64,000 bases of DNA from Macrostomum lignano (taxonomy: Eukaryota). The stretch covers positions 7,253-71,252 of the forward strand of contig NIVC01000912.1 in the NCBI GenBank assembly GCA_002269645.1, given 5' to 3'. The position numbers and the translations under genes are program-made. Below the pieces are notes generated by a model, which saw nothing but the letters and a program-made list of their open reading frames with translations, was not told the origin of the DNA and did no database searches. Below, piece after piece: positions 20,280 to 64,000 of the stretch (position 1 is its first letter; every line of letters starts with the position of its first letter).

Positions 20280-20732
20280 TCAAGCGCGTCGCTCCTTGCG
20301 AAACCAGGTGATGAAGTCTTCTGTGTTGAAGGTGGTTACCGAACGACCAACCGCGTGGTGAAACCGCCGCAGGTCGTTTTTGTAGACGCCGAGGGCCACT
20401 CTCTGGCCGACATTCGTGGCGAAGTAGCGCTCCACCTCGGCGAAAGTCGTCTGGCCCGTGCCCTCCTCGTCGACGCTTTCAAACACAAGTCGCCAGGTCT
20501 CCTCTTCGCGTTCATTCTCCGGGTAGATGTCCAGAAGCAGCATGTACTCCCGCTTTGTGATCTTGCCGTCGCGGTTTGCGTCAAGAATCTCGAACATCTC
20601 AACGGCTGACGATTCGTCTAGGCCGTCGCGCTGGCAGACGGCCTTGAGACCCTCGAATGTGATAAAGCCATTGCCCTCGGTGTCGATCTCGGTGAACCAG
20701 CGCAGAAGCTGCTGTTTATCTGGCCTGGACAT
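20280..20732 (-). CDS. Intronless calmodulin-like EF-hand protein, 150 aa (three recognisable loops, fourth degenerate)
   Basis: Loops DTEGNGFITFEG, DANRDGKITKRE and DEEGTGQTTFAE. Confidence 0.9.
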   Translation of the reverse strand: MSRPDKQQLLRWFTEIDTEGNGFITFEGLKAVCQRDGLDESSAVEMFEILDANRDGKITKREYMLLLDIYPENEREEETWRLVFESVDEEGTGQTTFAEVERYFATNVGQRVALGVYKNDLRRFHHAVGRSVTTFNTEDFITWFRKERRA

Positions 20733-27677: not shown

Positions 27678-29180
27678 AAGGGAGTAACGATGCCTTTGAA
27701 CTTCCATTTTTCAGGGAGTGACAATGGCTCTGAACTTCCACTTTTCAGGGAGTGACAATGGCTCTGAACTTCCACTTTTCAGGGAGTGACAATGGCTCTG
27801 AACTTCCACTTTTCAGAGAGTGACAATGGCTCTGAACTTCCACTTTTCAGAGAGTGACAATGACTCTGAACTTCCACTTTTCAGGGAGTGACAATGACTC
27901 TGAACTTCCACTTTCAGGGAGTGACAATGGCTCTGAACTTCCACTTTTCAGGGAGTGACAATGGCTCTGAACTTCCACTTTTCAGGGAGTGACAATGGCT
28001 CTGAACTTCCACTTTTCAGAGAGTGACAATGGCTCTGAACTTCCACTTTTCAGAGAGTGACAATGACTCTGAACTTCCACTTTTCAGGGAGTGACAATGA
28101 CTCTGAACTTCCACTTTTCAGGGAGTGACAATGACTCTGAACTTCCACTTTTCAGGGAGTGACAATGGCTCTGAACTTCCACTTTTCAGGGAGTGACAAT
28201 GACTCTGAACTTCCACTTTTCAGGGAGTGACAATGGCTCTGAACTTCCACTTTTCAGGGAGTGACAATGACTCTGAACTTCCACTTTTCAGGGAGTGACA
28301 ATGACTCTGAACTTCCACTTTCAGGGAGTGACAATGACTCTGAACTTCCACTTTTCAGGGAGTGACAATGACTCTGAACTTCCACTTTTCAGGGAGTGAC
28401 AATGACTCTGAACTTCCACTTTTCAGGGAGTGACAATGACTCTGAACTTCCACTTTCAGGGAGTGACAATGACTCTGAACTTCCACTTTTCAGGGAGTGA
28501 CAATGGCTCTGAACTTCCACTTTTCAGGGAGTGACAATGGCTCTGAACTTCCACTTTTCAGAGAGTGACAATGGCTCTGAACTTCCACTTTTCAGGGAGT
28601 GACAATGACTCTGAACTTCCACTTTTCAGGGAGTGACAATGGCTCTGAACTTCCACTTTTCAGGGAGTGACAATGACTCTGAACTTCCACTTTTCAGGGA
28701 GTGACAATGGCTCTGAACTTCCACTTTTCAGGGAGTGACAATGACTCTGAACTTCCACTTTCAGGGAGTGACAATGACTCTGAACTTCCACTTTTCAGGG
28801 AGTGACAATGACTCTGAACTTCCACTTTTCAGGGAGTGACAATGACTCTGAACTTCCACTTTTCAGGGAGTGACAATGACTCTGAACTTCCACTTTCAGG
28901 GAGTGACAATGGCTCTGAACTTCCACTTTTCAGGGAGTGACAATGACTCTGAACTTCCACTTTCAGGGAGTGACAATGGCTCTGAACTTCCACTTTCAGG
29001 GAGTGACAATGGCTCTGAAATTCCGACTTTTAGAGAGTGACGATGACTGAACTTCCAAATTCTAGAGAGTGACAATGACTCTGAACTTCCACTCTTCAAG
29101 GAGTGACAATGACCCTAAAATTCAGACTTTCAGAGAGTGAAAATGACTTTGAATTCCGACAACCAGAGAGTGACAATCAA
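27678..29180. repeat. 34-bp minisatellite (GAGTGACAATGRCTCTGAACTTCCACTTTTCAGG), about 44 copies
   Basis: Direct inspection; degenerate 3' edge. Confidence 0.97.
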
Positions 29181-46013: not shown

Positions 46014-47573
46014 ATGGCATTTCTACTCATGCCAGAAAGTACAATGCGCACTTCAGCCTGGTGTCTGTTGCTATTCGGTGCTTTGCTATGCGGCCTAGTT
46101 GCCGTGCTGTTGCCAACTGGCGGTCTCGGCTCTGCGGGCCTCACCCGCCGCCTGCTCCCGGCGTACCTGCGAGTGCACCGGCTTGTGGCCGAGTTCTCCA
46201 GACAATTGTTTGGCCGCAGCAATAAAGAGGGATTTGCCGAGAAGAATGCGCAGAACAGCTGTTTGTACTTTCTGTTCGACGATACCCAGCTGCAGCGTAA
46301 TAGGCACCTGTCCATACTGGGCACCGTGTTCGACGTTAGCGAGTCGGCCTTCTATAAGCCTGGGGGCGAGTACGAGCAGTTCACTGGACGAGACGCTTCG
46401 AGGAATTTCGCTACTAGCGATACGGGCGCCGAGAGTGGCAGCTTCTCTGATAATTTGGACGGCTTGAGCGGAGCTCAGCTAGCGGACCTGTTCGAGTGGC
46501 AGAGGTTCGTGTTGCTTTTTTGGGGGCGCTTTCTGGGTGCTCGAAATTAACGGTGACTGATTGTCCCATGGGTCATGGAGGGATGGATGACTGATTGTCC
46601 CATGGGTCATGGAGGGATGGATGACTGATTGTCCCATGGGTCATGGAGGGGTGGATGACTGTCCAATGGGTCATGGAGAGAAGGATGACTGATTGTGTCT
46701 AATGGGTCATAGAGGGGTGGATGACTGTCCAATGGGTCATGGAGAGAAGGATGACTGATTGTGTCTAATGGGTCATAGAGGGGTGGATGACTGTCCAATG
46801 GGTCATGGAGAGAAGGATGACTGATTGTGTCTAATGGGTCATAGAGGGGTGGATGACTGTCCAATGGGTCATGGAGAGAAGGATGACTGATTGTGTCTAA
46901 TGGGTCATAGAGGGGTGGATGACTGTCCAATGGGTCATGGAGAGAAGGATGACTGATTGTCTAATGGGTCATAGAGGGGTGGATGACTGTCTAATGGGTC
47001 ATGGAGAGAAGGATGACTGATTGTCTAATGGTTCATAGAGGGGTGGATGACTGTCTAATGGGTCATGGAGAGAAGGATGACTGATTGTCTAATGGTTCAT
47101 AGAGGGGTGGATGACTGATAATCCAATGGGTCATAGAGGGATGAATGACTGATTGTCCGATGGACCACATCGTCAGGTTCTACTTCAGCAAGTACAAGTG
47201 CGTTGGCTACAGCCGCGGCCGGTTCTACCACCCCTCCCTGCTGGAGACCGACTACTTGCGCGGCATGAAAGCCGCCGCCGACGCGCACCTGGCGCGCAAA
47301 TCTCAACTAGCCGAAAACTTTCCGCCGTGCGATGCCACCACTATAGACGGCAAAACCGTAGTGTATTGCAACGGCGCCCTGAACTTGGATCCGAACAACG
47401 TGATGCCCAACACTCGGTATCCGAGGATCTTCTATAATAAATTCGACGCCACATCTGGCTGCGCCTGCGTCCTGCGGGACATGCGCTCCGACGGCAGGGT
47501 GGCCGTCTACGAGGCCTGCTCGCCAGACGCGCTGCAGTGCACAGTGCTGAGGCCGCCTCCGCCGCGTGATTGA
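46014..47573 (+). CDS. CYB5D2: Neuferricin (MAPR family cytochrome b5-like heme/steroid-binding protein); exons 46014-46504 and 47177-47573
   Basis: N-terminal TM; LSILGTVFDVS...FYKPGGEYEQFTGRDASRNF; W..FY..KY..VG...GRFY; Cys-containing C-terminus (FPPC, PR.F...GCACV). In-frame phase-2 intron. Confidence 0.9.
46552..47160 (+). repeat. Minisatellite with alternating 36-bp and 30-bp variants (66-bp dimer), neuferricin intron
   Basis: ATGGGTCAT at 46666, 46702, 46732 and onward. Confidence 0.93.
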
Positions 47574-47644: not shown

Positions 47645-48625
47645 TTCCTCACATTCTCTCCTGTGCTGTCCTCTCTTCTCTCCTCTCTCCTCTCTTCTCC
47701 CTCTCCCCTCTCCTCTCGTCTTCTCTCTCTCTTCTCCCCTCCTATCCTCTCCTCTCCTCTCCTCTCCTCTCCTCTCCTCCCTCTCCTCCCTCTCTTCTCC
47801 CCTCTTCTCTCTCTCTTCTCCCCTCCTCTCCTCTCCTCTCCTCTCCTCCCTCTCTTCTCCCTCTCCCCTCTCCTCTCGTCTTCTCTCTCTCTTCTCCCCT
47901 CCTATCCTCTCCTCTCCTCTTCTATCCTCTCCTCTCCTCTCCTCTCCTCCCTCTCCTCCCTCTCTTCTCCCCTCTTCTCTCTCTCTTCTCCCCTCCTCTC
48001 CTCTCCTCTCCTCTCCTCCCTCTCTTCTCCCCTCCTCTCCTCTCCTCTCCTCTCCTCTCCTCTCCTCTCCTCTCCTCTCCTCTCCTCTCCTCTCCTCTTC
48101 TCTCCTCTCCTCTCCTCTCCTCTCCTCCCTCTCCTCCCTCTCTTCTCCCCTCTTCTCTCTCTCTTCTCCCCTCCTCTCCTCTCCTCTCCTCTCCTCCCTC
48201 TCTTCTCCCCTCCTCTCCTCTCCTCTCCTCTCCTCTCCTCTCCTCTCCTCTCCTATCCTCTCCTCTCCTCTCCTCTCCTCTCCTCTCCTCCCTCTCTTCT
48301 CCCCTCTTCTCTCTCTCTTCTCCCCTCCTCTCCTCTCCTCTCCTCCCTCTCTTCTCCCCTCCTCTCCTCTCCTCTCCTCTCCTCTCCTCTCCTCTCCTCC
48401 CTCTCCTCCCTCTCTTCTCCCCTCTTCTCTCTCTCTTCTCCCCTCCTCTCCTCTCCTCTCCTCCCTCTTTTCTCCCCTCTTCTCTCTCTCTTCTCCCCTC
48501 CTCTCCTCTCCTCTCCTCTCCTCTCCTCTCCTCTCCTCTCCTCTCCTCTCCTCTTCTCTCCTCTCCTCTCCTCTCCTCTCCTCTCCTCTCCTCTCCTCTC
48601 CTCTCCTCTCCTCTCCTCTCCTTCT
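47645..48625. repeat. (CTCCT)n-based pyrimidine-only tract, about 1 kb
   Basis: Direct inspection. Confidence 0.97.
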
Positions 48626-49229
48626 CCTTTCCCTCTCCCACTTTCCTTGTTTACCTCTTTCTCTTCCTCTCCTCTTCGCCTCTATTCTCTCTCCCTCTAC
48701 CCTACTCCATCTTATCTCCCTTCAATATCAAACGGTTATTCGATCGATTATTTAATTTTATTTCTAACTCTAACTAATACTTGTAGTTATCGCCGCCTGT
48801 GTGGCATGCAATCTTCAGCTGGGCAGTGCATGGAAACATGACATTCCTGCTGAGTATTCACTTTCAACTCAAATCATGCCTGCTGCCAAGCAATATTGAT
48901 AGATTTTGTTTGTTCTGACTTTTGTTGAATTTGATGCTGCCCAAGCTTTGATTATAGTAATAAGTGTATTTCCAATAAATCTAAATAATTTTCACGCTTG
49001 TACGTCCCGGTATGATCTTCTTTACTGGCTTTGCTTGTTTTCTTTGCTTTGCTAGCAACATAAAAAATCAGCGCGTCTTATTCCCACTGTTATCGTGTAC
49101 ATTCCATGGCGTTGAAAATATACACGGAAAACGATTTGTAAAACTGTTTTACACATACGGTGGTGAATGTTTGTACTTTTCAAGACAATGATTCACCTTT
49201 TTGTTATTTACCGATCTCGTGTGTCTTTA

Positions 49230-50006: not shown

Positions 50007-53000
50007 ATGCAAATCCCGCAGACGCAGAGCATTGTAGTCCAGGTTGGCCAGTGCGGCAACCAGATCGGGTCCCGGTTCTGGGATCTGGCACTGCGGGAGC
50101 ACGCGTCCGTCAGCCGGCGGGGCGACTTTGACGATTCTCTGGGGACGTTTTTTCGTCAGCAGCCCGGCGAGGGTCAGGTGAGGGAGGGAAGCTGTGGGGG
50201 ATTTTGGGGAGAAATTTAAGCTTAGCTTATCTGGATTTAGGTAAGAAACGGTCAGGATAGCAGGCCAGCAACCGTCAGGTAGAATAAAATTTTCAAACGG
50301 GGGATAAAAATAGTCAGGGGATTGTCATGAGTCAGAAATGGTCAGGGAGAATCGCCATGAGTCAGGAATGGTCAGGGAGAATCGCAATGAGTCAGGAATG
50401 GTCAGGGAGAATCGCAATGAGTCAGGAATGGTCAGGGAGAATCGCAATGAGTCAGGAATGGTCAGGGAGAATCGCAATGAGTCAGGAATAGTCAGGGAGA
50501 ATCGCCATGAGTCAGGAATGGTCAGGGAGAATCGCCATGAGTCAGAAACGGTTAGGGAGAATCGCAATGAGTCAGGAATGGTCTGGGAGAATCGCAATGA
50601 GTCAGGAATGGTCAGGGAGAATCGCAATGAGTCAGGAATGGTCAGGGAAAATCGCAGAGTCAGGAATGGTCAGTGAGAATCGCAATGAGTCAGGAATGGT
50701 CAGGGAGAATCGCAATGAGTCAGGAATGGTCAGGGAGAATCGCAATGAGTCAGGAATGGTCAGGGAGAATCGCCATGAGTCAGGAATGGTCAGTGAGAAT
50801 CGCCATGAGTCAGGAATGGTCAGGGAGAATCGCAATGAGTCAGGAATGGTCAGTGAGAATCGCAATGAGTCAGGAATAGTCAGGGAGAATCGCCATGAGT
50901 CAGGAATGGTCAGGGAGAATCGCCATGAGTCAGGAACGGTTAGGGAGAATCGCAATGAGTCAGGAATGGTCAGGGAGAATCGCAATGAGTCAGGAATGGT
51001 CAGTGAGAATCGCAATGAGTCAGGAATGGTCAGGGAGAATCGCCATGAGTCAGGAATGGTCAGTGAGAATCGCCATGAGTCAGGAATGGTCAGGGAGAAT
51101 CGCCATGAGTCAGGAATGGTCAGTGAGAATCGCAATGAGTCAGAAATGGTCAGGGAGAATCGCAATGAGTCAGGAATGGTCAGGGAGAATCGCCATGAGT
51201 CAGGAATGGTCAGGGAGAATCGCAATGAGTCAGGAATAGTCAGGGAGAATCGCCATGAGTCAGGAATGGTCAGGGAGAATCGCCATGAGTCAGGAATGGT
51301 CAGGGAGAATCGCAATGAGTCAGGAATAGTCAGGGAGAATCGCCATGAGTCAGGAATGGTCAGGGAGAATCGCCATGAGTCAGGAACGGTTAGGGAGAAT
51401 CGCAATGAGTCAGGAATGGTCTGGGAGAATCGCCATGAGTCAGGAATGGTCTGGGAGAATCGCCATGAGTCAGGAATGGTCTGGGAGAATCGCCATGAGT
51501 CAGGAATGGTCAGTGAGAATCGCAATGAGTCAGGAATGGTCAGGGAGAATCGCCATGAGTCAGGAATGGTCTGGGAGAATCGCCATGAGTCAGGAATGGT
51601 CAGGGAGAATCGCCATGAGTCAGGAATGGTCAGTGAGAATCGCAATGAGTCAGAAATGGTCAGTGAGAATCGCCATGAGTCAGGAATGGTCAGGGAGAAT
51701 CGCCATGAGTCAGGAATGGTCAGTGAGAATCGCAATGAGTCAGAAATGGTTAGGGAGAATCGCCATGAATCAGGAATGGTCAGGGAGAATCGCAATGAGT
51801 CAGGAATGGTCAGTGAGAATCGCCATGAGTCAGGAATGGTCAGGGAGAATCGCAATGAGTCAGGAATGGTCAGGGAGAATCGCAATGAGTCAGGAATGGT
51901 CTGGGAGAATCGCCATGAGTCAGGAATGGTCAGTGAGAATCGCCATGAATCAGGAATGGTCAGGGAGAATCGCAATGAGTCAGGAATAGTCAGGGAGAAT
52001 CGCCATGAGTCAGGAACGGTCAGGGAGAAGTTTCGCAGGTGCGAGTGAATTATCATGGTTAGTTGCGATCAGGATGAGGATTCCGAGCCACAATTCCTTG
52101 TCCGCAGGCTCTGAAAGCTCGCGCAGTGCTGGTGGACATGGAGGAGGGCGTGGTCGGCGAACTGTTGAAAGGCCGACTACGCGGTGTGTTCGATCATTCC
52201 GCGCTGATCACGGACGTGTCGGGGTCCGGCAACAACTGGGCTGTCGGGCACTGCGAATACGGCCTCAGGCACCGGGAGGCCCTGTCTGAGTCCATTCGGA
52301 GATGCGCCGAGCAGTGCGACTGCCTGCAGTGCTTCTTCCTGCTGCACTCCATGGGCGGCGGCACCGGCTCCGGCCTGGGCACGGCCATCCTCCAGCTGCT
52401 GCGGGACCAGTATCCCGAAGTGTACAGGTGGGGGTGCAGTGAGCTAGGCATTGATCTGGGCCTGGTGCACAAAAACAACACCTCAAACGCAACCCCTGTA
52501 CAACCTCTCCGCTAACTCAGGTTCGTCACCGCTGTCTACCCGTCTGAAGATGATGACGTCATCACTAGTCCATACAACAGCGTGCTGGCAATGCGCTGCC
52601 TGACAGACTACGCCGATTGCGTTATGCCCATAGACAATGCCTGTCTGGCTGGCATCGCGCAGCGGGTGCAGGACTCGGGCCGCACCGCTGCCGGGTCTTC
52701 TGCTGCTGCCGGGGCTGCGGCGGTCAGTGCTGCATCGGGGCATTTGAGCTGATTTGAGTGATGGATGGGGAAGAATGAAGGCTGATCTTCATGGCTAAGG
52801 ACTGGGAGGAGCCATGAAGATAACTGAGATGGTATCGGGAGAGAGCGGATAACTGAGGATTGGGAGCTGGGAGAGAGCGGATAACTGAGATGGTATTCGG
52901 AGGGAGCGGATAACTGAGATGGTATCGGGAGGGAGCGGATAACTGAGATGGTATTGGGGAGAGCGGATAACTGAGATTGTATTGGGAGAGAGCGGATAAC

Positions 53001-55903
53001 TGAGTTGGTATGGGAGAGAGCGGATAACTGAGGATTGGGAGCTGAGAGAGAGCGGATAACTGAGATTGTATTGGGAGGCAGCGGATAACTGAGTTGGTAT
53101 GGGAGAGAGCGGATAACTGAGATGGTATGGGAGAGAGCGGATAACTGAGATGGTATGGGAGAGAGCGGATAACTGAGATTGTATTGGGAGAGAGCGGATA
53201 ACTGAGATTGTATTGGGAGAGAGTGGATAACTGAGGATTGGGAGCTGGGAGAGAGCGGATAACTGAGGATTGGGAGCTGGGAGAGAGCGGATAACTGAGG
53301 ATTGGGAGCTGAGGGAGAGCGGATAACTGAGGATTGGGAGCTGGGAGAGAGCGGATAACTGAGGATTGGGAGCTGGGAGAGAGCGGATAACTGAGGATTG
53401 GGAGCTGGGAGAGAGCGGATAACTGAGGATTGGGAGCTGGGAGAGAGCGGATAACTGAGGATTGGGAGCTGGAGAGAGCGGATAACTGAGGATTGGGAGC
53501 TGGGAGAGAGCGGATAACTGAGGATTGGGAGCTGGGAGAGAGCGGATAACTGAGGATTGGGAGCTGGGAGAGAGCGGATAACTGAGGATTGGGAGCTGGG
53601 AGAGAGCGGATAACTGAGGATTGGGAGCTGGGAGAGAGCGGATAACTGAGGATTGGGAGCTGGGAGAGAGCGGATAACTGAGGATTGGGAGCTGGGAGAG
53701 AGCGGATAACTGAGGATTGGGAGCTGGGAGAGAGCGGATAACTGAGGATTGGGAGCTGGGAGAGAGCGGAAGGATGCGTCAAGAAGCACACTAGAAAGCG
53801 CTCACTTCAACCCCAACTCCAACCCTAAGCAGAAGGACGCCAAGCCATTCGACGCGATGAACAGCATAGTGGCCAACCTGCTGCTGAACCTCACGGCTTC
53901 CGCCCGCTTCTCCGGCACGCTGAACGTGGATCTGAACGAGATCAGCATGAACCTGGTGCCGTTCCCCCGCCTGCACTACCTGCTGGCCGCGCAGAGTCCG
54001 CTGTCCCCGGCCCTGCCGCCCAGGCGGCCGGATCAGGCATTCAACGAGTCGTTCGGCAAGGAGGCTCAGTTGTTCTCGGCCGAGCCGCGATCGCATCTCT
54101 ACCTGGCCTGCGCCCTCCTGCTGCGGGGTCGAATCGATCTAAGCGACGTCCGGCGCTGCGTCGATCGGCTGGGAAATCGGCTGGCATTCGCGGACTGGAA
54201 TCCGGACTGCTGGAAGATCGGGCACTGCGCCGTGCCCCCGGCTGGGCAGCAGTTCGCGCTGCTCAGTCTGGCCAACAACACTGCCATTGGGGCCAGCCTG
54301 CACCTGCTCGGGGACAGGTTCAGCCGGCTCTATAAGCGGAGGGCGCATCTGCATCACTATACCCAGGCAGGTTTGCAGCTAATCTGTTTGAGTCCGCTAG
54401 GAATCTGTTTGAGTCAGCTGGGAATCTGTTTGAGTCAGCTGGGAATCTGTTTGAGTCAGCTGGGAATCTGCTTGAGTCAGCTAGGAATCTGTTTGAGTCC
54501 GCTAGGAATCTGTTTGAGTCCGCTAGGAATCTGTTTGAGTCCGCTATTAATCTGTTTGAGTCCGCTAGGAATCTGTTTGAGTCAGCTGGGGATCTGCTTG
54601 AGTTAGTTGGGAATCTGTTTGAGTCAGCTGGGAATCTGTTTGAGTCAGCTGGGAATCTGTTTGAGTCAGCTGGGAATCTGTTTGAGTCAGCTGGGAATCT
54701 GTTTGAGTCAGCTGGGAATCTGTTTGAGTCAGCTGGGAATCTGTTTGAGTCAGCTGGGAATCTGCTTGAGTCAGCTAGGAATCTGTTTGAGTCCGCTAGG
54801 AATCTGTTTGAGTCCGCTAGGAATCTGTTTGAGTCCGCTATTAATCTGTTTGAGTCCGCTAGGAATCTGTTTGAGTCAGCTGGGGATCTGCTTGAGTTAG
54901 TTGGGAATCTGTTTGAGTCAGCTGGGAATCTGTTTGAGTCAGCTGGGAATCTGTTTGAGTCAGCTGGGGATCTGCTTGAGTTAGTTGGGAATCTGTTTGA
55001 GTCAGCTGGGAATCTGTTTGAGTCAGCTGGGAATCTGTTTGAGTCAGCTGGGAATCTGCTTGAGTCAGCTAGGAATCTGCTTGAGTCAGTTGGGAATCTG
55101 TTTGAGTCAGCTGGGAATCTGTTTGAGTCAGCTGGGAATCTGTTTGAGTCAGCTGGGAATCTGTTTGAGTCAGTTGGGAATCTGTTTGAGTCAGCTGGGA
55201 ATCTGTTTGAGTCAGCTGGGAATCTGTTTGAGTCCGCTAGGAATCTGTTTGAGTCAGCTGGGAATCTGTTTGAGTCAGCTGGGAATCTGCTTGAGTCAGC
55301 TGGGAATCTGCTTGAGTCAGCTGGGAATCTGCTTGAGTCAGCTGGGAATCTGTTTGAGTCAGCTGGGAATCTGCTTGAGTTAGTTGGGAATCTGTTTGAG
55401 TCAGCTGGTAATCTGTTTGAGTCAGCTGGGAATCTGCTTGAGTCAGCTGGGAATCTGCTTGAGTCAGCTGGGAATCTGCTTGAGTCCGCTGGGAATCTGC
55501 TTGAGCCAGCCAGTTTGGTTCTGCATCATTTGAGCTTTATGGATCCTTCTTAGCCACCTGAGACGATTCTGAGTCATTTCAGTAGTCTGGGATCGTTCCG
55601 GGTTACGAGTATTTCAGTAATTGAGGATCATACAGAACTGAGTCATGTGAAATAATTATTGAGTCATGAGTAGTCAATCGGAAATATTGGTAACAATTTC
55701 GGCCTTACATAATTCTAAAATATATCTTTTCTCCGTTATTCGCTTCCTCGCCCGCGCAGGTTGACGGCTTTGAGGCCGCCACCTTCGATTCCGCATTCGC
55801 TTCGCTCAACGATCTGCGCGAGGACTACGCAGCTCTAGAGAGGCGCCACGCGGCCGGGGCCTCGGCTGAGCCGCCTTTGCCTCGGCTGAAGATCGCCTCC
55901 TGA
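50007..55903 (+). CDS. TUBE1: Epsilon-tubulin, ~457 aa; exons 50007-50177, 52108-52427, 52521-52722, 53830-54366, 55760-55903
   Basis: TQSIVVQVGQCGNQIG..FWDLALREHA, LKARAVLVDMEEGVV, GSGNNWAVGH, HSMGGGTGSGLG, DDVITSPYNS, KPFDAMNSIVANLLLNLT, AHLHHY and LPRLKIA are characteristic of epsilon-tubulin. The last intron needs a GC donor. Confidence 0.96.
50327..52028 (+). repeat. 30-bp minisatellite (ATGAGTCAGGAATGGTCAGGGAGAATCGCM), about 57 copies, TUBE1 intron 1
   Basis: Direct inspection. Confidence 0.98.
52815..53770 (+). repeat. 32-bp (5' part 29-bp) minisatellite (GGATAACTGAGGATTGGGAGCTGGGAGAGAGC), TUBE1 intron 3
   Basis: Direct inspection. Confidence 0.96.
54383..55510 (+). repeat. 21-bp minisatellite (GGGAATCTGTTTGAGTCAGCT), about 53 copies, TUBE1 intron 4
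   Basis: Direct inspection. Confidence 0.97.
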
Positions 55904-56019
55904 GTCACAGGAGTCGCCTGAGTCACCCGAGACTCGAGGAGTCACCTGAACCTATTGAGCCTTCTAAACTTTGAAAAATCTAGCTTTCTGAAATATGAAC
56001 ACGCTTGAATTTGAACCAT

Positions 56020-56955
56020 ATGAACCCACTGATTCCTGAGCCCACTGATCCCTGAACCCACTGATCCCTGAACCCACTGATCCCTGAGCCCACTGATCCC
56101 TGAGCCCACTGATCCTTGAACCCACTGATTCCTGAGCCCACTGATTCCTGAGCCCACTGATCCCTGAACCCACTGATCCCTGAACCCACTGATCCCTGAA
56201 CCCACTGATCCCTGAGCCCACTGATCCCTGAGCCCACTGATCCTTGAGCCCACTGATCCCTGAGCCCACTGATCCCTTAACCCACTGATCCCTGAACTCA
56301 CTGATCCCTGAGCCCACTGATCCCTGAACCCGCTGAACCCTGAACCCACTGATCCCTTAACCCACTGATCCCTGAACTCACTGATCCCTGAGCCCACTGA
56401 TCCCTGAACCCGCTGAACCCTGAACCCACTGATCCCTTAACCCACTGATCCCTGAACTCACTGATCCCTGAACTCACTGATCCCTGAACTCACTGATCCC
56501 TGAACCTACTGATCCCTTAACCCGCTGAACCCTGAACCCACTGAACCCATGAACCCACTGATCCCTGAACTCACTGATCCCTGAACTCACTGATCTCTTA
56601 ACCCACTGATCCCTTAACCCACTGATCCCTTAACACACTGATCCCTGAACTCACTGATCTCTTAACCCACTGATCCCTGAACCTACTGATCCCTTAACCC
56701 GCTGAACCCTGAACCCACTGAACCCATGAACTCACTGATCCCTGAACTCACTGATCTCTTAACCCACTGATCCCTGAGCCCACTGATCCCTGAACCCACT
56801 GATCCCTGAACCCACTGATCCCTGAACTCACTGATCTCTTAACCCACTGATCCCTGAACCCACTGGACCCATGAACCCACTGATCCCTGAACTCACTGAT
56901 CCCTGAACCCACTGATCCCTGAACCCGCTGAACCCTGAACCCACTGACCCATGAA
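56020..56955. repeat. 16-bp minisatellite (CCCACTGATCCCTGAR) downstream of TUBE1
   Basis: Direct inspection. Confidence 0.96.
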
Positions 56956-58343
56956 CCACCTCAATCTTGAGCCTCCTAAACAGAGCCTAAACCTGCTAAA
57001 TCCATCTACCTAAAAATCTTGAACTCTGTTTTGTGTTGCACGAAAAATGTTTTAAATGCCTCGCATTTATATAAAAGCTTCTTTGTGTCGAACGTCACAA
57101 TTAATTTCAAAATTTGACTCTGTTTTAGCGAAACCGTTATCTCCGTCCTCAAAGATGCTTGTTCTCGGCCAACTAATAATTATTATTCCTATTTTACATA
57201 CTTATCTCTAGTTTTTTTCCTGTTCATTTAGTGCGAACCAATTAAGAGAACAAACGTTTAGCATGTGTCCAAACTTTCGAAACACTTTCTTGTACTTTTC
57301 TAGCGTTTATTTATTTAGTATAACTACTTACAGGCTTCTCATCGTTAGTAGTCTATTTGCGCATATCGAGCGAATACTCGTAGCTGGCAGCATAGGACAA
57401 TTCGGCATTCTGCGGCTAAAGAATGGGTCTTGAATGACGAAAAGATGCGTTTATAAAGTCACATAGCCTGACATATTGAATAATTGACAGGTGTACGTTG
57501 TGGCTTTGCCCTCTTCATTATATACAGCTTAGTGCCTGGTTTCCAATGCTCCAGCATAGCCTTCAGCGGCTGAATTTGTTCAATGAGACGGTCTCAACAC
57601 ACAGCCAGTCGCAGTCGAAGAGTTCCTCCGTCGGTCTGGCTAGAAACAAATATTTGCAATTCAACGACTTACTAATTTATTACCTGTGTCTGCGAGTATT
57701 TGTAGCATAATTTCCCAAACTTTAAAGCCGATTGTTATATGTCGAGTCGGTTCTTTTTACGATATTTTCAAATACGACAGATGCCTCACTACACATTGAA
57801 TAAATGAACGGACATCTGCAGTTTCTTCAGCCCATTAAATTTTTGATACTTCCATATTAAGAAATAGATTGCATGAATGCTTTGTATACCCTATATACTC
57901 GTACTCTATCTTTTTGACTTCTTGCCGATGGTCGAGAAGTAGGAGACTGAGGAATTGGGATTTTGGCTTCGGCTTAAAATACAAATATTGGCGCTCTGTG
58001 TTAGCTCAATTCTCTGTAGTCAACCACGGCATGCTGTGTGGTCCCTACACAACACTTCCTAAGACTCAAGGCATAGAATGTTTGAAAAACACGCAATCTC
58101 CTACATATATAGTAGTGTCTATGGTTACATGTAGGCCGCAACCGCTAAAAGTCGCGCTTGATCTCTGAGCCATAATTTATAAAAGCCTTTCCTAATCAAC
58201 ATTCATCGTTAATTTTTATGGCCAAAAATTACGTTATTTAACTTCAACGCTACAAAATAACAAGTCTAAAACATGTTCCTTGAAGTAACCAAACTATACG
58301 GATTTTATAATACCGTTGCTTTGTATTAAAAAGCTAAAAGCAT

Positions 58344-61300
58344 ATGGAAAGAAAATCTTCCGAAAAAGCTTCAAAGCAGCCGCCAGAGAAGCAGCACCGA
58401 CCAGCGCGGCTGTGACGGAGCTGATGATCTCGAGGCTGAACAAGTTGAAGGCGTCTGGACTGTATGACGAGTCGGTGCTGACATCTGTCGGAATGGCACG
58501 GGCTCTGCTGTCGAGTGGTGCAACACCCGGATCGATGGAACGCCTCGACGGTGCGTTGGATTCTTACAAGAAGCAAGCGTCAGATAGAGACGCTCTTCTG
58601 GCCGCGGCTGTCGTTGACAAGGAAGATGGCGTACAACCGGACGAGACTCCAAAGTCAGAAGCTCCTGCAGCTGAGGTCGAGAAGCCACAGGTTTCCACGG
58701 ACGAGGTTGGAAAGCGTGTCGAGTCAAAGCAGCCGCCAGAGGAAGCAGCACCGACCAGCGCGGCTGTGACGGAGCTGATGATCTCGAGGCTGAACAAGTT
58801 GAAGGCGTCTGGACTGTATGACGAGTCGTGCTGACATCTGTCGGAATGGCACGGGCTCTGCTGTCGAGTGGTGCAACACCCGGATCGATGGAACGCCTCG
58901 ACGGTGCGTTGGATTCTTACAAGAAGCAAGCGTCAGATAGAGACGCTCTTCTGGCCGCGGCTGTCGTTGACAAGGAAGATGGCGTACAACCGGACGAGAC
59001 TCCAAAGTCAGAAGCTCCTGCAGCTGAGGTCGAGAAGCCACAGGTTTCCACGGACGAGGTTGGAAAGCGTGTCGAGTCAAAGCAGCCGCCAGAGGAAGCA
59101 GCACCGACCAGCGCGGCTGTGACGGAGCTGATGATCTCGAGGCTGAACAAGTTGAAGGCGTCTGGACTGTATGACGAGTCGGTGCTGACATCTGTCGGAA
59201 TGGCACGGGCTCTGCTGTCGAGTGGTGCAACACCCGGATCGATGGAACGCCTCGACGGTGCGTTGGATTCTTACAAGAAGCAAGCGTCAGATAGAGACGC
59301 TCTTCTGGCCGCGGCTGTCGTTGACAAGGAAGATGGCGTACAACCGGACGAGACTCCAAAGTCAGAAGCTCCTGCAGCTGAGGTCGAGAAGCCACGGTTT
59401 CCACGGACGAGGTTGGAAAGCGTGTCGAGTCAAAGCAGCCGCCAGAGGAAGCAGCACCGACCAGCGCGGCTGTGACGGAGCTGATGATCTCGAGGCTGAA
59501 CAAGTTGAAGGCGTCTGGACTGTATGACGAGTCGGTGCTGACATCTGTCGGAATGGCACGGGCTCTGCTGTCGAGTGGTGCAACACCCGGATCGATGGAA
59601 CGCCTCGACGGTGCGTTGGATTCTTACAAGAAGCAAGCGTCAGATAGAGACGCTCTTCTGGCCGCGGCTGTCGTTGACAAGGAAGATGGCGTACAACCGG
59701 ACGAGACTCCAAAGTCAGAAGCTCCTGCAGCTGAGGTCGAGAAGCCCACAGGTTCCACGGACGAGGTTGGAAAGCATGTCGAGTCAAAGCAGCCGCCAGA
59801 GGAAGCAGCACCGACCAGCGCGGCTGTGACGGAGCTGATGATCTCGAGGCTGAACAAGTTGAAGGCGTCTGGACTGTATGACGAGTCGGTGCTGACATCT
59901 GTCGGAATGGCACGGGCTCTGCTGTCGAGTGGTGCAACACCCGGATCGATGGAACGCCTCGACGGTGCGTTGGATTCTTACAAGAAGCAAGCGTCAGATA
60001 GAGACGCTCTTCTGGCCGCGGCTGTCGTTGACAAGGAAGATGGCGTACAACCGGACGAGACTCCAAAGTCAGAAGCTCCTGCAGCTGAGGTCGAGAAGCC
60101 ACAGGTTTCACGGACGAGGTTGGAAAGCATGTCGAGTCAAAGCAGCCGCCAGAGGAAGCAGCACCGACCAGCGCGGCTGTGACGGAGCTGATGATCTCGA
60201 GGCTGAACAAGTTGAAGGCGTCTGGACTGTATGACGAGTCGGTGCTGACATCTGTCGGAATGGCACGGGCTCTGCTGTCGAGTGGTGCAACACCCGGATC
60301 GATGGAACGCCTCGACGGTGCGTTGGATTCTTACAAGAAGCAAGCGTCAGATAGAGACGCTCTTCTGGCCGCGGCTGTCGTTGACAAGGAAGATGGCGTA
60401 CAACCGGACGAGACTCCAAAGTCAGAAGCTCCTGCAGCTGAGGTCGAGAAGCCACAGGTTTCCACGGACGAGGTTGGAAAGCGTGTCGAGTCAAAGCAGC
60501 CGCCAGAGGAAGCAGCACCGACCAGCGCGGCTGTGACGGAGCTGATGATCTCGAGGCTGAACAAGTTGAAGGCGTCTGGACTGTATGACGAGTCGGTGCT
60601 GACATCTGTCGGAATGGCACGGGCTCTGCTGTCGAGTGGTGCAACACCCGGATCGATGGAACGCCTCGACGGTGCGTTGGATTCTTACAAGAAGCAAGCG
60701 TCAGATAGAGACGCTCTTCTGGCCGCGGCTGTCGTTGACAAGGAAGATGGCGTACAACCGGACGAGACTCCAAAGTCAGAAGCTCCTGCAGCTGAGGTCG
60801 AGAAGCCACAGGTTTCCACGGACGAGGTTGGAAAGCGTGTCGAGTCAAAGCAGCCGCCAGAGGAAGCAGCACCGACCAGCGCGGCTGTGACGGAGCTGAT
60901 GATCTCGAGGCTGAACAAGTTGAAGGCGTCTGGACTGTATGACGAGTCGGTGCTGACATCTGTCGGAATGGCACGGGCTCTGCTGTCGAGTGGTGCAACA
61001 CCCGGATCGATGGAACGCCTCGACGGTGCGTTGGATTCTTACAAGAAGCAAGCGTCAGATAGAGACGCTCTTCTGGCCGCGGCTGTCGTTGACAAGGAAG
61101 ATGGCGTACAACCGGACGAGACTCCAAAGTCAGAAGCTCCTGCAGCTGAGGTCGAGAAGCCACAGGTTTCCACGGACGAGGTTGGAAAGCGTGTCGAGTC
61201 AAAGCAGCCGCCAGAGGAAGCAGCACCGACCAGCGCGGCTGTGACGGAGCTGATGATCTCGAGGCTGAACAAGTTGAAGGCGTCTGGACTGTATGACGAG

Positions 61301-64000
61301 TCGGTGCTGACATCTGTCGGAATGGCACGGGCTCTGCTGTCGAGTGGTGCAACACCCGGATCGATGGAACGCCTCGACGGTGCGTTGGATTCTTACAAGA
61401 AGCAAGCGTCAGATAGAGACGCTCTTCTGGCCGCGGCTGTCGTTGACAAGGAAGATGGCGTACAACCGGACGAGACTCCAAAGTCAGAAGCTCCTGCAGC
61501 TGAGGTCGAGAAGCCACAGGTTTCCACGGACGAGGTTGGAAAGCGTGTCGAGTCAAAGCAGCCGCCAGAGGAAGCAGCACCGACCAGCGCGGCTGTGACG
61601 GAGCTGATGATCTCGAGGCTGAACAAGTTGAAGGCGTCTGGACTGTATGACGAGTCGGTGCTGACATCTGTCGGAATGGCACGGGCTCTGCTGTCGAGTG
61701 GTGCAACACCCGGATCGATGGAACGCCTCGACGGTGCGTTGGATTCTTACAAGAAGCAAGCGTCAGATAGAGACGCTCTTCTGGCCGCGGCTGTCGTTGA
61801 CAAGGAAGATGGCGTACAACCGGACGAGACTTCAAAGTCAGAAGCTCCTGCAGCTGAGGTCGAGAAGCCACAGGTTTCCACGGACGAGGTTGGAAAGCAT
61901 GTCGAGTCAAAGCAGCCGCCAGAGGAAGCAGCACCGACCAGCGCGGCTGTGACGGAGCTGATGATCTCGAGGCTGAACAAGTTGAAGGCGTCTGGACTGT
62001 ATGACGAGTCGGTGCTGACATCTGTCGGAATGGCACGGGCTCTGCTGTCGAGTGGTGCAACACCCGGATCGATGGAACGCCTCGACGGTGCGTTGGATTC
62101 TTACAAGAAGCAAGCGTCAGATAGAGACGCTCTTCTGGCCGCGGCTGTCGTTGACAAGGAAGATGGCGTACAACCGGACGAGACTCCAAAGTCAGAAGCT
62201 CCTGCAGCTGAGGTCGAGAAGCCACGGTTTCCACGGACGAGGTTGGAAAGCGTGTCGAGTCAAAGCAGCCGCCAGAGGAAGCAGCACCGACCAGCGCGGC
62301 TGTGACGGAGCTGATGATCTCGAGGCTGAACAAGTTGAAGGCGTCTGGACTGTATGACGAGTCGGTGCTGACATCTGTCGGAATGGCACGGGCTCTGCTG
62401 TCGAGTGGTGCAACTTCCGGATCGATGGAACGCCTCGACGGTGCGTTGGATTCTTACAAGAAGCAAGCGTCAGATAGAGACGCTCTTCTGGCCGCGGCTG
62501 TCGTTGACAAGGAAGATGGCGTACAACCGGACGAGACTCCAAAGTCAGAAGCTCCTGCAGCTGAGGTCGAGAAGCCACAGGTTTCCACGGACGAGGTTGG
62601 AAAGCATGTCGAGTCAAAGCAGCCGCCAGAGGAAGCAGCACCGACCAGCGCGGCTGTGACGGAGCTGATGATCTCGAGGCTGAACAAGTTGAAGGCGTCT
62701 GGACTGTATGACGAGTCGGTGCTGACATCTGTCGGAATGGCACGGGCTCTGCTGTCGAGTGGTGCAACACCCGGATCGATGGAACGCCTCGACGGTGCGT
62801 TGGATTCTTACAAGAAGCAAGCGTCAGATAGAGACGCTCTTCTGGCCGCGGCTGTCGTTGACAAGGAAGATGGCGTACAACCGGACGAGACTCCAAAGTC
62901 AGAAGCTCCTGCAGCTGAGGTCGAGAAGCCACAGGTTTCCACGGACGAGGTTGGAAAGCGTGTCGAGTCAAAGCAGCCGCCAGAGGAAGCAGCACCGACC
63001 AGCGCGGCTGTGACGGAGCTGATGATCTCGAGGCTGAACAAGTTGAAGGCGTCTGGACTGTATGACGAGTCGGTGCTGACATCTGTCGGAATGGCACGGG
63101 CTCTGCTGTCGAGTGGTGCAACACCCGGATCGATGGAACGCCTCGACGGTGCGTTGGATTCTTACAAGAAGCAAGCGTCAGATAGAGACGCTCTTCTGGC
63201 CGCGGCTGTCGTTGACAAGGAAGATGGCGTACAACCGGACGAGACTCCAAAGTCAGAAGCTCCTGCAGCTGAGGTCGAGAAGCCACAGGTTTCCACGGAC
63301 GAGGTTGGAAAGCGTGTCGAGTCAAAGCAGCCGCCAGAGGAAGCAGCAGCACCGACCAGCGCGGCTGTGACGGAGCTGATGATCTCGAGGCTGAACAAGT
63401 TGAAGGCGTCTGGACTGTATGACGAGTCGGTGCTGACATCTGTCGGAATGGCACGGGCTCTGCTGTCGAGTGGTGCAACACCCGGATCGATGGAACGCCT
63501 CGACGGTGCGTTGGATTCTTACAAGAAGCAAGCGTCAGATAGAGACGCTCTTCTGGCCGCGGCTGTCGTTGACAAGGAAGATGGCGTACAACCGGACGAG
63601 ACTCCAAAGTCAGAAGCTCCTGCAGCTGAGGTCGAGAAGCCACAGGTTTCCACGGACGAGGTTGGAAAGCGTGTCGAGTCAAAGCAGCCGCCAGAGGAAG
63701 CAGCACCGACCAGCGCGGCTGTGACGGAGCTGATGATCTCGAGGCTGAACAAGTTGAAGGCGTCTGGACTGTATGACGAGTCGGTGCTGACATCTGTCGG
63801 AATGGCACGGGCTCTGCTGTCGAGTGGTGCAACACCCGGATCGATGGAACGCCTCGACGGTGCGTTGGATTCTTACAAGAAGCAAGCGTCAGATAGAGAC
63901 GCTCTTCTGGCCGCGGCTGTCGTTGACAAGGAAGATGGCGTACAACCGGACGAGACTCCAAAAGTCAGAAGCCTCCTGCAGCTGAGGTCGAGAAGCACAG
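58344..64000 (+). CDS. Putative giant repeat protein of 118-aa units; frameshifted in this sequence, function unknown
   Basis: Unit length is a multiple of 3 and stop-free in one + frame (708 aa uninterrupted at 60179-62305). ATG at 58344 (MERKSSEKASKQPPE) merges into the repeat phase if one missing G near 58387 is restored. Confidence 0.5.
58371..64000 (+). repeat. 354-bp tandem array, about 16 near-identical copies, continuing beyond the window
   Basis: Unit recurs every 354 nt with rare 1-nt indels and substitutions. Confidence 0.98.

What the first reader, a model, noticed from the sequence alone, without database searches (positions are those of the whole stretch)
58344..64000. 354-bp array encoding an unrecognised 118-aa module: giant repeat protein or gene-derived satellite
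Seen: at least 16 copies, over 99% identical. The unit reads AAPTSAAVTELMISRLNKLKASGLYDESVLTSVGMARALLSSGATPGSMERLDGALDSYKKQASDRDALLAAAVV (helical-looking) plus DKEDGVQPDETPKSEAPAAEVEKPQVSTDEVGKRVESKQPPEE (acidic, Pro-rich linker), with no Cys, Trp or Phe: a beads-on-a-string design of over 1,880 aa if intact. A unique 9-codon leader with ATG at 58344 enters the repeat phase, and no signal peptide is present. An R/H variant is shared by 4 non-adjacent copies (~59772, 60125, 61895, 62602), showing real homogenisation. Giant repeat proteins are known in flatworm adhesion, but I do not recognise this unit as one. A viral or transposon origin, or a dinucleosome-length satellite (2 x 177 bp), are alternatives.
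Basis: partly seen in the sequence, partly recalled or inferred. Interest (0 to 1): 0.7.

Follow-up and report, generated by a model that had tools for sequence, protein, structure and literature searches.

The report
Giant flatworm repeat-protein gene, first array
The 354-bp array is real and is the first third of a roughly 28-kb, probably single-exon gene of the flatworm Macrostomum lignano, which strings together about 87 near-identical copies of an unclassified three-helix module; it is a lineage-specific curiosity, not a satellite or a virus.

Summary

As given, the window is not an intact ORF. It has five 1-bp deletions and two 1-bp insertions, and the ATG at 58344 reaches a stop after 23 codons.

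The organism is Macrostomum lignano. The unit is 100% identical to GenBank PAA54909.1, a fragmentary "hypothetical protein". On public Mlig_3_7 contigs of the same locus the frame is open, for at least 6,743 codons on one contig.

The layout there is: leader, array A (118 aa x 16.6-25.6), a 373-aa unique domain X1, array B (91 aa x 18-47), a homologous 377-aa domain X2, array C (97/98 aa x 12-24), an acidic tail, then stop.

- Modules A, B and C are homologous at 36-37% identity.
- All unit lengths are multiples of 3.
- AlphaFold predicts a three-helix bundle followed by a disordered acidic linker.
- No Pfam, PDB, viral or non-Macrostomum relative was found.
- No signal peptide or transmembrane segment is present.

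Best reading: a transcribed, giant, intracellular beads-on-a-string scaffold. Its function is untested. The satellite, transposon and viral readings are not supported. Interest is moderate.

The parts
58344..58370 (+). ATG and 9-codon unique leader (MERKSSEKA) in front of the first, partial unit
   Evidence: The ATG is conserved in the window and in all three public copies. It is in phase with the array in L001 and L002, with ORFs of 2,324 and 2,323 aa. It is out of phase in the window and L003 because one G of a GG is missing at 58388.
58371..64000 (+). Array A: 15.9 copies of the 354-bp (118-codon) unit, cut by the window end about 250 bp before the array ends
   Evidence: TRF gives period 354, 99% matches, score 11108. 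The unit is 100% identical to M. lignano PAA54909.1. The same array has 16.6 copies in L001 (same haplotype; the 4.8 kb upstream is 99.7% identical), 19.6 in L002 and 25.6 in L003.
60158..60388 (+). One example of the folded part of the module (77 aa, AAPTSAAV...LLAAAVV): predicted three-helix bundle
   Evidence: AlphaFold2 predicts helices 5-22, 27-40 and 46-77, with block-mean pLDDT 80-94 over residues 1-70. All 19 residues invariant across A, B and C lie here: R15 L16 L19 G23 D26 S28 V29 T31 S32 V33 R37 A38 L40 A44 R51 L52 L56 Y59 A71.
60389..60511 (+). One example of the linker (41 aa, DKEDGVQPDE...SKQPPEE): disordered and acidic, with a Glu/Pro/Val/Lys-rich composition
   Evidence: Block-mean pLDDT is 49-63 and no secondary structure is predicted. 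Net charge is -7 and pI 4.3, with E 22%, P 15%, V 12% and K 10%. Linker length and sequence are not conserved in B and C, but the acidity is.
58388..58388 (+). 1-bp deletion (GAGGAAG to GAGAAG) in the first partial unit; it puts the ATG at 58344 out of phase
   Evidence: The same loss is present in L003 and absent in L001 and L002. It could be an allele or a recurrent homopolymer error; this is undecided.
58828..62226 (+). Four further frame-breaking 1-bp deletions, at 58828, 59396, 60109 and 62226, plus a compensated +C/-T pair at 59747/59752
   Evidence: None is present in the public copy of the same haplotype (L001), where all 16 full units are identical. The unique flank shows seven 1-bp indels in 1.4 kb between the two assemblies, so consensus errors are the likely cause.
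63342..63972 (+). In-frame 3-bp insertion (63342-63344) and two 1-bp insertions (63960, 63972) in the last units of the window
   Evidence: (sequence contexts).
59776..62606 (+). R-to-H variant (CGT>CAT) at 59776, 60129, 61899 and 62606; also P94S at 61832 and P53S at 62415-62416
   Evidence: Every substitution among the units is missense and none is nonsense. These variants are absent from L001, where polishing may have erased them.
60108..62333 (-). Antisense open frame across the array (741 codons in the intact stretch): by-product, not a gene
   Evidence: It lies in a different relative frame from the open antisense frames of arrays B and C, which are open in 31-49% of codon shuffles of those units. 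No Pfam stretch passes on its own.

Best explanation
The array is the 5' (N-terminal) third of one very large protein-coding gene of Macrostomum lignano. GenBank annotates it only in fragments, as the hypothetical proteins Mlig011518 and Mlig012374.

Shown here:
- The locus reads: ATG leader, array A (118 aa x 16.6-25.6), unique all-alpha domain X1 (373 aa), array B (91 aa x 18 to about 47), X2 (377 aa, homologous to X1), array C (97/98 aa x 12-24), a 155-aa acidic Ser-rich tail, then stop.
- No intron is needed anywhere in this layout.
- The A, B and C modules are homologous.
- Module A is predicted as a roughly 70-residue three-helix bundle followed by a disordered acidic linker. The B and C units share its conserved core and carry 25- to 32-residue acidic linkers.
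- The protein has no signal peptide and no membrane segment.

Inferred:
- The product is a cytoplasmic, micrometre-scale beads-on-a-string protein of roughly 9,000-9,500 residues.
- It carries about 87 essentially identical bundles that present the same conserved surface (the G-[LP]-[FY]-D-x-S-V-[LV]-T-S-V turn and helix 2). This would make it a multivalent scaffold or elastic tether for a partner that is still unknown.
- The acidic linkers would act as spacers that keep identical neighbouring domains apart and soluble.
- X1 and X2 would act as anchoring or assembly domains.
- Near-identity of the units and the differing copy numbers among homeologous copies point to ongoing unequal exchange or gene conversion.
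- The frameshifts in the window are most likely consensus errors of the assembly it comes from.
For: Identity and transcription:
- The unit is 100% identical to M. lignano PAA54909.1.
- The Mlig_3_7 annotation that produced these gene models is built from RNA-seq and a de novo transcriptome (PMC5730564).

Open frames in public copies:
- L001 ATG 4751-11725, 2,324 aa.
- L002 10837-20868, 3,343 aa, spanning B-X2-C-tail.
- L003 has at least 6,743 stop-free codons spanning A-X1-B and running off the locus.
- The X1-to-B junction is in frame in L003.

Protein-level constraint:
- Unit lengths of 354, 273 and 294/291 bp are all multiples of 3.
- The modules are 36-37% identical with 19 invariant positions, all in the fold region.
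- About half of the conserved residues use different codons (13 of 28 for A versus B, 13 of 25 for A versus C).
- X1 and X2 are 25% identical with E 3e-33, and both are open.
- Every unit substitution seen is missense and none is nonsense.

Fold and composition:
- AF2 block-mean pLDDT is 80-94 for the three helices, and the linker is disordered.
- The folded parts are near neutral and the linkers carry net -7 to -11. There is no transmembrane segment or signal peptide.

Error reading of the frameshifts:
- L001, from the same haplotype, has 16 identical 354-bp units.
- The unique flank differs from the window by seven 1-bp indels in 1.4 kb.
- Frame breaks lie at different places in each copy.
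Against: - No direct RNA or peptide evidence was seen here. Transcription rests only on the nature of the annotation pipeline.
- No single public copy is open from end to end. L001 and L002 have stops between X1 and B, and L002 has breaks around the A-X1 junction. On the window's own haplotype (L005), X2 is split over three frames, array C carries many 1-bp indels and the scaffold ends in a gap.
- The G loss at 58388 is shared by the window and L003, so it may be real.
- The intracellular scaffold function is inference from composition and architecture only. The AF2 alignment had only 3 sequences. The X1 model was unusable (pLDDT 38.6). The true 5' end could be an upstream exon or a trans-spliced leader.
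- The near-perfect unit identity in Mlig_3_7 could partly be a polishing artefact.
Confidence: 0.72

Rival explanations
1. There are two adjacent genes rather than one giant ORF: gene 1 is leader-A-X1 (about 2,300-3,400 aa) and gene 2 is B-X2-C-tail. They might be co-transcribed and separated by spliced-leader trans-splicing. The window array would then be the bulk of gene 1.
For: - L001 has a stop at 11725, 46 bp before array B. L002 has a stop at 10963.
- The annotation uses two gene identifiers, Mlig011518 and Mlig012374.
- Every B unit begins with Met.
- M. lignano has operons and a spliced leader that ends in ATG (PMC8629364).
Against: - L003 reads straight through X1 into B in frame.
- The L001 and L002 stops arise from 1-bp length changes in C and A runs, at different positions in the two copies.
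- The frame used in L003 is the one conserved with X2, in the shared D-F-D-x-T-[RK]-x-Y-I-L-S-T-G-[LV]-W stretch near the C-terminal end of X1 and X2 (DFDHTRNYILSTGLW in X1, DFDTTKTYILSTGVW in X2).
- The analogous X2-to-C junction is continuous in frame in L002.
Confidence: 0.22
2. The product is a polyprotein precursor in the manner of filaggrin or the nematode polyprotein antigens. The long chain would be cut in the linkers to release many copies of a small helical protein that acts as a monomer.
For: - The units are near-identical, separated by exposed disordered linkers, and vary in copy number.
- The array A linker contains a G-K-R site.
Against: - No signal peptide is present.
- The G-K-R is not conserved in the B or C linkers, and it is the site of the R/H variant.
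- No conserved linker motif of any kind exists.
- The large X1 and X2 domains have no obvious place in such a precursor.
Confidence: 0.07
3. The array is a decaying gene remnant or a gene-derived satellite. It would be non-functional DNA whose open frame merely reflects recent amplification of one open unit.
For: - The window copy and every public copy carry frame interruptions somewhere.
- The genome is 15% simple and tandem repeats (PMC5730564).
- One open unit automatically makes a whole homogeneous array open.
Against: - Three independently diverged arrays all keep unit lengths divisible by 3, an open frame and the same hydrophobic pattern.
- The roughly 375-codon non-repetitive X1 and X2, of low G+C, are open and conserved at 25% identity.
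- The interruptions are only 1-bp length changes, which is the error signature of long-read consensus, and never nonsense substitutions.
- RNA-based gene models exist for the locus.
- Array periods of 273 and 294 bp do not fit a 177-bp nucleosomal rule.
Confidence: 0.06
4. The product is a secreted or extracellular structural material (adhesive, mucus, rhabdite, eggshell or seminal component) whose true N-terminal signal lies on an exon upstream of the window's ATG.
For: - The same species makes giant repeat-rich secreted adhesion proteins. Mlig-ap2 has 21 x 255 aa plus 25 x 221 aa repeats (PMC6410801).
- The gene models are 5'-partial.
Against: - The ATG and its short leader are conserved and directly precede the array in all copies, after 1.4 kb of 37% G+C sequence in which no ORF of 150 aa or more was listed.
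- The modules contain no Cys and match no extracellular domain.
- None of three predicted tryptic peptides, nor the gene names, occur in the held supplementary mass-spectrometry files of the adhesion study. Those files may be truncated.
Confidence: 0.1

Closest known systems
Mlig-ap2 and Mlig-ap1, the giant adhesion proteins of Macrostomum lignano (PMC6410801)
   Same: Same species. Each is a very large lineage-specific protein with no database homologues. Mlig-ap2 also has two successive arrays of long repeats (21 x 255 aa, then 25 x 221 aa).
   Different: The adhesion proteins are Cys-rich and secreted. They carry vWD, TIL, LDL-receptor, TSP1, lectin and EGF domains, and ap1 has extremely basic Lys/Arg regions. 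This protein has Cys-free acidic modules, no recognisable domain and no signal peptide. There is no sequence relationship.
Three-helix-bundle repeat and adaptor domains (spectrin repeat PF00435; MIT domain; TPR-like hairpins)
   Same: The predicted fold is a three-helix bundle. The best, non-significant, structure matches are MIT domains. Weak sub-threshold Pfam hits are to Spectrin (modules B and C) and TPR_19 (module A).
   Different: Nothing reaches significance: Foldseek best E is 0.65, and the Pfam hits are below gathering scores. Spectrin repeats are contiguous, about 106 aa long, and share a continuous helix. Here roughly 70-aa bundles are separated by 25- to 41-residue disordered linkers and are essentially identical to their neighbours.
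Titin PEVK and similar entropic-spring segments (my own knowledge)
   Same: Folded beads alternate with Pro/Glu/Val/Lys-rich unstructured segments in a giant intracellular protein. The A linker is 59% P+E+V+K.
   Different: The B and C linkers are Glu/Ala- or Asp/Gln-rich rather than PEVK. There are no Ig or FnIII domains and no kinase. The resemblance is by composition only.
Giant repeat scaffolds that bind many copies of a small partner, such as the giant proteins of the Spirostomum contractile apparatus (PMC9946354, abstract seen) and Sfi1-centrin (my own knowledge)
   Same: Megadalton intracellular proteins made of many similar tandem units, each offering one binding site.
   Different: No partner is known here and there is no sequence similarity. 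This is only a model for how the protein might work.
Profilaggrin and other tandem polyproteins (my own knowledge)
   Same: Near-identical long units, allelic copy-number variation, a very large single exon, and exposed linkers.
   Different: There is no S100 head domain, no conserved cleavage motif, and large internal unique domains are present.

Membership tests
Flatworm adhesion proteins (Mlig-ap1/ap2 type) | Extracellular interaction domains (vWD, TIL, TSP1, C-type lectin, EGF, LDL-receptor) | tested here: not met
   Pfam scans of modules A, B and C, of X1 and X2, and of the tail found none of these domains.
Flatworm adhesion proteins (Mlig-ap1/ap2 type) | High cysteine content, or extremely basic Lys/Arg regions | tested here: not met
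   The modules have 0 Cys and unit pI is 4.4-4.65. The family features are taken from PMC6410801.
Flatworm adhesion proteins (Mlig-ap1/ap2 type) | Secretion: a signal peptide, and presence in adhesive footprints | tested here: inconclusive
   The conserved ATG leader has no signal peptide. Predicted tryptic peptides are absent from the held supplementary files of PMC6410801, but those files may be truncated and the true 5' end is unverified.
Spectrin repeat (PF00435) | Score above the Pfam gathering threshold; contiguous ~106-aa three-helix repeats | tested here: not met
   B scores 23.0 bits and C 18.1 bits against a cut-off of 29.9, and A gives no hit. The bundles are about 70 aa and separated by disordered linkers.
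MIT domain | Significant structural or sequence match to MIT three-helix bundles | tested here: not met
   The top Foldseek PDB hits are MIT domains, but at E 0.65-1.7, probability 0.14-0.35 and TM 0.28-0.40. No Pfam MIT hit was found.
TPR | Pfam TPR model above threshold; stacked helical hairpins forming a solenoid | tested here: not met
   TPR_19 scores E 0.013, 16.3 bits against a cut-off of 25. The phmmer hits to TPR proteins are inflated by repeats: 5-7 short stretches of roughly 27-35 residues.
Non-coding satellite DNA (dinucleosome-length) | No coding constraint; period tied to nucleosome spacing | tested here: not met
   All three related arrays have periods divisible by 3 (354, 273, 294/291) and open frames. 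Conservation is at the protein level with synonymous codon differences. The array is embedded in one frame with unique domains.
Non-coding satellite DNA (dinucleosome-length) | High genome-wide copy number at many loci | not testable with these tools
   No M. lignano genome search tool was available. Only one locus, in three homeologous copies plus one rearranged contig, was recovered through the protein databases.
Viral or transposon-derived gene | Detectable relatives among viral or mobile-element proteins, or element hallmarks | tested here: not met
   phmmer against 1.84 billion representatives found true hits only in M. lignano. Foldseek against BFVD gave a best E of 0.57. Pfam found no transposase, reverse transcriptase or integrase in the locus pieces scanned.
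Polyprotein precursors (filaggrin, nematode polyprotein antigens) | Conserved proteolytic site in every linker, plus an N-terminal targeting or head domain | tested here: not met
   The linkers of A, B and C share no motif. G-K-R occurs only in A and is polymorphic. There is no signal peptide and no S100 domain.

The most novel reading that the evidence does not exclude
A single uninterrupted exon of about 28 kb encodes a protein of about 9,400 residues made of roughly 87 three-helix bundles. Within each of the three arrays the bundles are about 100% identical to their neighbours. This would be an extreme exception to the observation (my own knowledge) that adjacent domains in natural multidomain proteins are usually kept below about 40% identity to avoid domain-swapped misfolding. 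The long acidic linkers would be what makes it tolerable. The protein would form a macrostomid-specific cytoskeletal tether or multivalent scaffold, and its length would be tuned by array copy number, which differs between homeologous copies (16.6, 19.6 and 25.6 for A; 18 to about 47 for B).
Probability: 0.3. Interest if true: 0.55.

Novelty: new member of a known kind. Interest (0 to 1): 0.4.

Why it matters
If the reading is right, a tractable model flatworm with working RNAi, in situ hybridisation and transgenesis carries an uncharacterised megadalton protein. Its module and its two spacer domains have no detectable relatives anywhere else.

The current annotation splits this gene into fragments. 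That would mislead expression and orthology analyses.

For protein science, it would be a natural test case for how a cell folds dozens of identical neighbouring domains, and for whether disordered acidic linkers protect against inter-domain misfolding.

For genome biology, it gives a clean example of three sister coding arrays. Each is homogenised within itself, but they have diverged from one another to 36-37% identity. Copy number differs between the homeologous copies of a recent polyploid.

For the scan itself, the lesson is practical. The frameshifts in the window look like assembly errors rather than biology, so the locus should be judged on a polished copy.

Tried and rejected
- Family and structure searches on the module. 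Pfam on modules A, B and C gave only sub-threshold or repeat-inflated hits: Ish1, TPR_19, Spectrin and HBM. PDB sequence searches with one sequence and with the module profile found nothing significant. Foldseek against PDB and BFVD found nothing below E 0.5.
- X1, X2 and the tail. Pfam found nothing. The PDB profile search found nothing. The word-index homologue search returned only the query's own protein. The AlphaFold model of X1 had pLDDT 38.6 and was not used for fold search.
- Homologues outside M. lignano. Three word-index searches and one exhaustive phmmer search were run. Hits to a phage-like repeat protein, TPR proteins and a moth "filaggrin-like" protein were inspected and rejected as repeat or low-complexity inflation.
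- Literature. The gene names and predicted tryptic peptides were not found in any main text, nor in the held supplements of five M. lignano papers.
- Antisense ORF as a gene. Rejected, because its relative frame differs between the arrays.
- Tubulin link. A tubulin-family gene is the upstream neighbour. A few weak three-helix matches are to tubulin cofactors and MIT domains. None is significant, so I do not claim microtubule binding.
- SL trans-splicing idea. Trans-splicing at the AG at 58331-58332 would put the leader's terminal ATG in phase with the window/L003 version of the array. The SL sequence comes from PMC8629364. This is a speculation I could not test.
- No Rfam family is present in the window.

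Full report
**1. The observation**

Tandem Repeats Finder reports one array at 58371-64000 with period 354, 15.9 copies, 99% matches and score 11108. It runs off the end of the window. Anchoring on the unit start gives 16 units with spacings of 354 (nine times), 353 (five times) and 357 (once).

The consensus unit is open in one sense frame only.

The window copy, however, is not an intact reading frame:
- 1-bp deletions at 58388, 58828, 59396, 60109 and 62226
- 1-bp insertions at 63960 and 63972
- a compensating +C/-T pair at 59747/59752
- an in-frame 3-bp insertion at 63342-63344

The longest clean stretch is 60179-62305. Because of the missing G at 58388, the ATG at 58344 reads MERKSSEKASKQPPEKQHRPARL and then stops. 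So in this sequence the leader does not enter the repeat phase.

The R-to-H variant is real (G>A at 59776, 60129, 61899 and 62606). It sits in units 4, 5, 10 and 12, so two of the four copies are adjacent.

One antisense frame is also open. Its relative frame differs from the open antisense frames of the sister arrays, and those are open in a third to a half of codon shuffles. I treat it as a by-product.

**2. Whose DNA it is**

A search with four clean units returned one protein at 100% identity: GenBank PAA54909.1, "hypothetical protein BOX15_Mlig011518g2, partial" from Macrostomum lignano. Two sister entries, g1 and g3, fall in the same cluster.

The rest of the window fits a metazoan chromosome arm. 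It holds exons of a PAF-acetylhydrolase, an EF-hand protein and a tubulin-family gene, among dozens of minisatellites. The published genome paper reports that 15% of this genome is simple and tandem repeats (PMC5730564).

**3. What lies beyond the window**

I fetched the public Mlig_3_7 contigs that encode these proteins.
- L001 (NIVC01002842.1) is the same haplotype as the window. Window 53591-58370, the 4.8 kb that ends at the array, is 99.7% identical to it, and the 1.4-kb unique flank next to the array is 99.3% identical.
- L002 and L003 are homeologous copies, whose 1.4-kb flanks are 98.7% and 97.9% identical to the window.

In L001 all 16 full units are identical and each is 354 bp long. 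The frame is open from the ATG corresponding to window 58344 for 2,324 codons.

The array does not end the gene. It runs without an intron into a 373-residue non-repetitive segment that contains Cys, Trp and Phe. I call this segment X1.

A second array starts immediately after X1. It has a 273-bp period and units 100% identical, with 17.9 copies in L002 and about 46.9 on the window's haplotype. Its 91-residue unit is visibly related to the 118-residue unit.

In L002 this second array continues in frame in four steps:
- a 377-residue segment, X2
- a third array of 294/291-bp units (97/98 aa), with 11.7 copies there, 17.5 in L004 and at least 23.6 in L005
- a 155-residue acidic Ser-rich tail
- a stop codon

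That is one ORF of 3,343 codons.

In L003 the X1-to-B junction is in frame. That contig has a stop-free run of at least 6,743 codons spanning A, X1 and B.

X1 and X2 are homologous: 25% identity over 336 residues, E 3e-33.

The locus spans about 28 kb, or roughly 9,000-9,500 codons on the window's haplotype. That figure is an estimate from coordinates, not a demonstrated ORF.

**4. Is it coding?**

Several independent lines say yes.
- All three arrays have unit lengths divisible by three.
- The modules have diverged to 36-37% identity yet keep 19 invariant positions. All 19 lie in the predicted folded part (R15 L16 L19 G23 D26 S28 V29 T31 S32 V33 R37 A38 L40 A44 R51 L52 L56 Y59 A71). The linkers differ in length and sequence but stay acidic.
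- About half of the residues conserved between modules are encoded by different codons.
- X1 and X2 are about 375 non-repetitive codons each, at 42% G+C. Both are open and still recognisably related.
- Every substitution seen among the units is missense and none is nonsense.
- The GenBank gene models come from an annotation built on RNA-seq and a de novo transcriptome (PMC5730564). This is indirect evidence that the locus is transcribed.

**5. Are the frameshifts real?**

Probably not, but this is not proven.
- The same-haplotype public copy lacks all of them.
- The unique flank between the two assemblies also differs by seven 1-bp indels in 1.4 kb.
- Several array changes are length changes in short base runs, including one compensating pair 8 nt apart.
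- The public copies themselves carry 1-bp frame breaks, but each at different places: near the end of X1 in L001, around the A-X1 junction and just before B in L002, and in X2 and throughout array C in L005.

One exception deserves notice. The G loss at 58388 is shared by the window and L003, while L001 and L002 have GG. If that loss is real, translation in those alleles could not start at the conserved ATG. The M. lignano spliced leader ends in ATG (PMC8629364). Trans-splicing at the AG at 58331-58332 would put that ATG in phase with the array. I could not test this.

**6. What the protein looks like**

AlphaFold2, given the three paralogous modules as its alignment, predicts helices at residues 5-22, 27-40 and 46-77 with 10-residue block-mean pLDDT of 80-94 over residues 1-70. 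Residues 78-118 are predicted disordered.

The folded parts are near neutral. The linkers carry net -7 to -11. The A linker is 59% Glu+Pro+Val+Lys.

Nothing in the locus looks like a signal peptide or a membrane segment.

X1 and X2 are predicted all-helical, but the X1 model has pLDDT 38.6 and is unusable.

**7. Comparison with what is known**

No Pfam family reaches its threshold for any piece. The Ish1, TPR_19, Spectrin and HBM hits are weak or inflated by repetition.

Other searches also found nothing:
- PDB sequence searches
- Foldseek against PDB, best E 0.65, to MIT three-helix bundles
- Foldseek against viral models, best E 0.57

An exhaustive phmmer search of 1.84 billion representative proteins found true relatives only in M. 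lignano. These are the protein itself and PAA71394.1 (Mlig012374g1), which is array C. A profile search added only another fragment from the same locus.

The M. lignano adhesion proteins share the species, the giant size and, in Mlig-ap2, the pattern of two successive repeat arrays. But they are Cys-rich, secreted and full of extracellular domains, or are extremely basic (PMC6410801). This protein is none of those.

No paper in the library mentions the gene names or the predicted peptides. The supplements of five M. lignano papers that I could search do not contain them either.

**8. How it most likely works**

Shown: the architecture, the homology among its parts, the predicted bundle-plus-linker anatomy, and the absence of secretion signals.

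Inferred: a cytoplasmic, micrometre-scale, flexible chain carrying about 87 copies of one small three-helix domain. The most conserved feature of that domain is the turn and second helix (G-[LP]-[FY]-D-x-S-V-[LV]-T-S-V). This would be a multivalent scaffold or elastic tether. The acidic linkers would act as spacers, and X1 and X2 as anchoring or assembly domains.

The near-identity within arrays, the divergence between arrays, and the copy-number differences among homeologous copies (16.6, 19.6 and 25.6 for A; 18 to about 47 for B; 12-24 for C) point to ongoing unequal exchange or gene conversion within each array. Polishing may exaggerate the identity.

Rivals are scored in the report sections: two genes instead of one, a polyprotein precursor, a decaying remnant or satellite, and a secreted material with an unseen signal exon.

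**9. Verdict**

This is a real, almost certainly coding, lineage-restricted giant repeat gene. It is already present in GenBank, but only as unconnected hypothetical fragments.

It is incomplete in extent and wrong in some details. The satellite, viral and transposon alternatives can be set aside.

It is a new member of a familiar class, the giant tandem-repeat proteins, with an unclassified module. I score interest as moderate (0.40). It would rise if the single roughly 9,400-residue ORF and a defined cellular structure were demonstrated.

Noticed in passing
window 1-57000 (for example 50326-52029, 21836-23276, 27679-29157, 13345-14012, 47656-48638): The region is extremely dense in minisatellites and microsatellites, with periods of 4-113 bp and often 25-200 copies. 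The long ORFs that run through them (such as 50507-52048, 513 aa) are repeat artefacts, not genes.
   Followed up: partly
window 52126-52515 (+) and 55669-55908: A tubulin-family exon with the GGGTGSG motif. Further downstream, 55669-55908 is 99% identical to the 3' end of the tubulin gene model in L002. So a tubulin gene whose introns are filled with minisatellites is the upstream neighbour of the giant gene in both homeologues.
   Followed up: partly
window 4047-4895 (+), 8994-9785 (+), 20283-20732 (-), 39879-41108 (+), 46014-46547 (+): Ordinary host exons by Pfam: PAF-acetylhydrolase (E 2e-35) and an EF-hand protein (E 1e-12) are clear. The Na/H exchanger, C2H2 zinc finger and cytochrome b5 hits are weak or near the threshold.
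   Followed up: no
L004 (NIVC01001166.1) 1-13723: C-like and B arrays on the minus strand abut, head to head at about 8560-8575, a C array on the plus strand that then runs into the normal tail. This is either an inverted duplication of part of the locus or an assembly chimera.
   Followed up: no
L005 (NIVC01002842.1, the window's haplotype) 5304-12161: Array C here mixes 294-bp units with a 291-bp subtype (3-bp deletion plus linked substitutions). It is peppered with 1-bp indels and ends in a run of N, so the 3' end of the gene is not assembled on this haplotype.
   Followed up: partly
L001, L002 and L003: arrays versus X1 and X2: Within one reading frame the arrays have third-position G+C of 0.59-0.68, while the unique X1 and X2 domains have 0.40-0.41. 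This would fit GC-biased gene conversion acting on the homogenising arrays, but it was not tested.
   Followed up: no
window 58316-58343: In the window and in L003, the frame that is in phase with the array is open back to 58316 and passes an AG at 58331-58332. The M. lignano spliced leader ends in ATG, so a trans-spliced start is conceivable for the alleles that lack the G at 58388.
   Followed up: no
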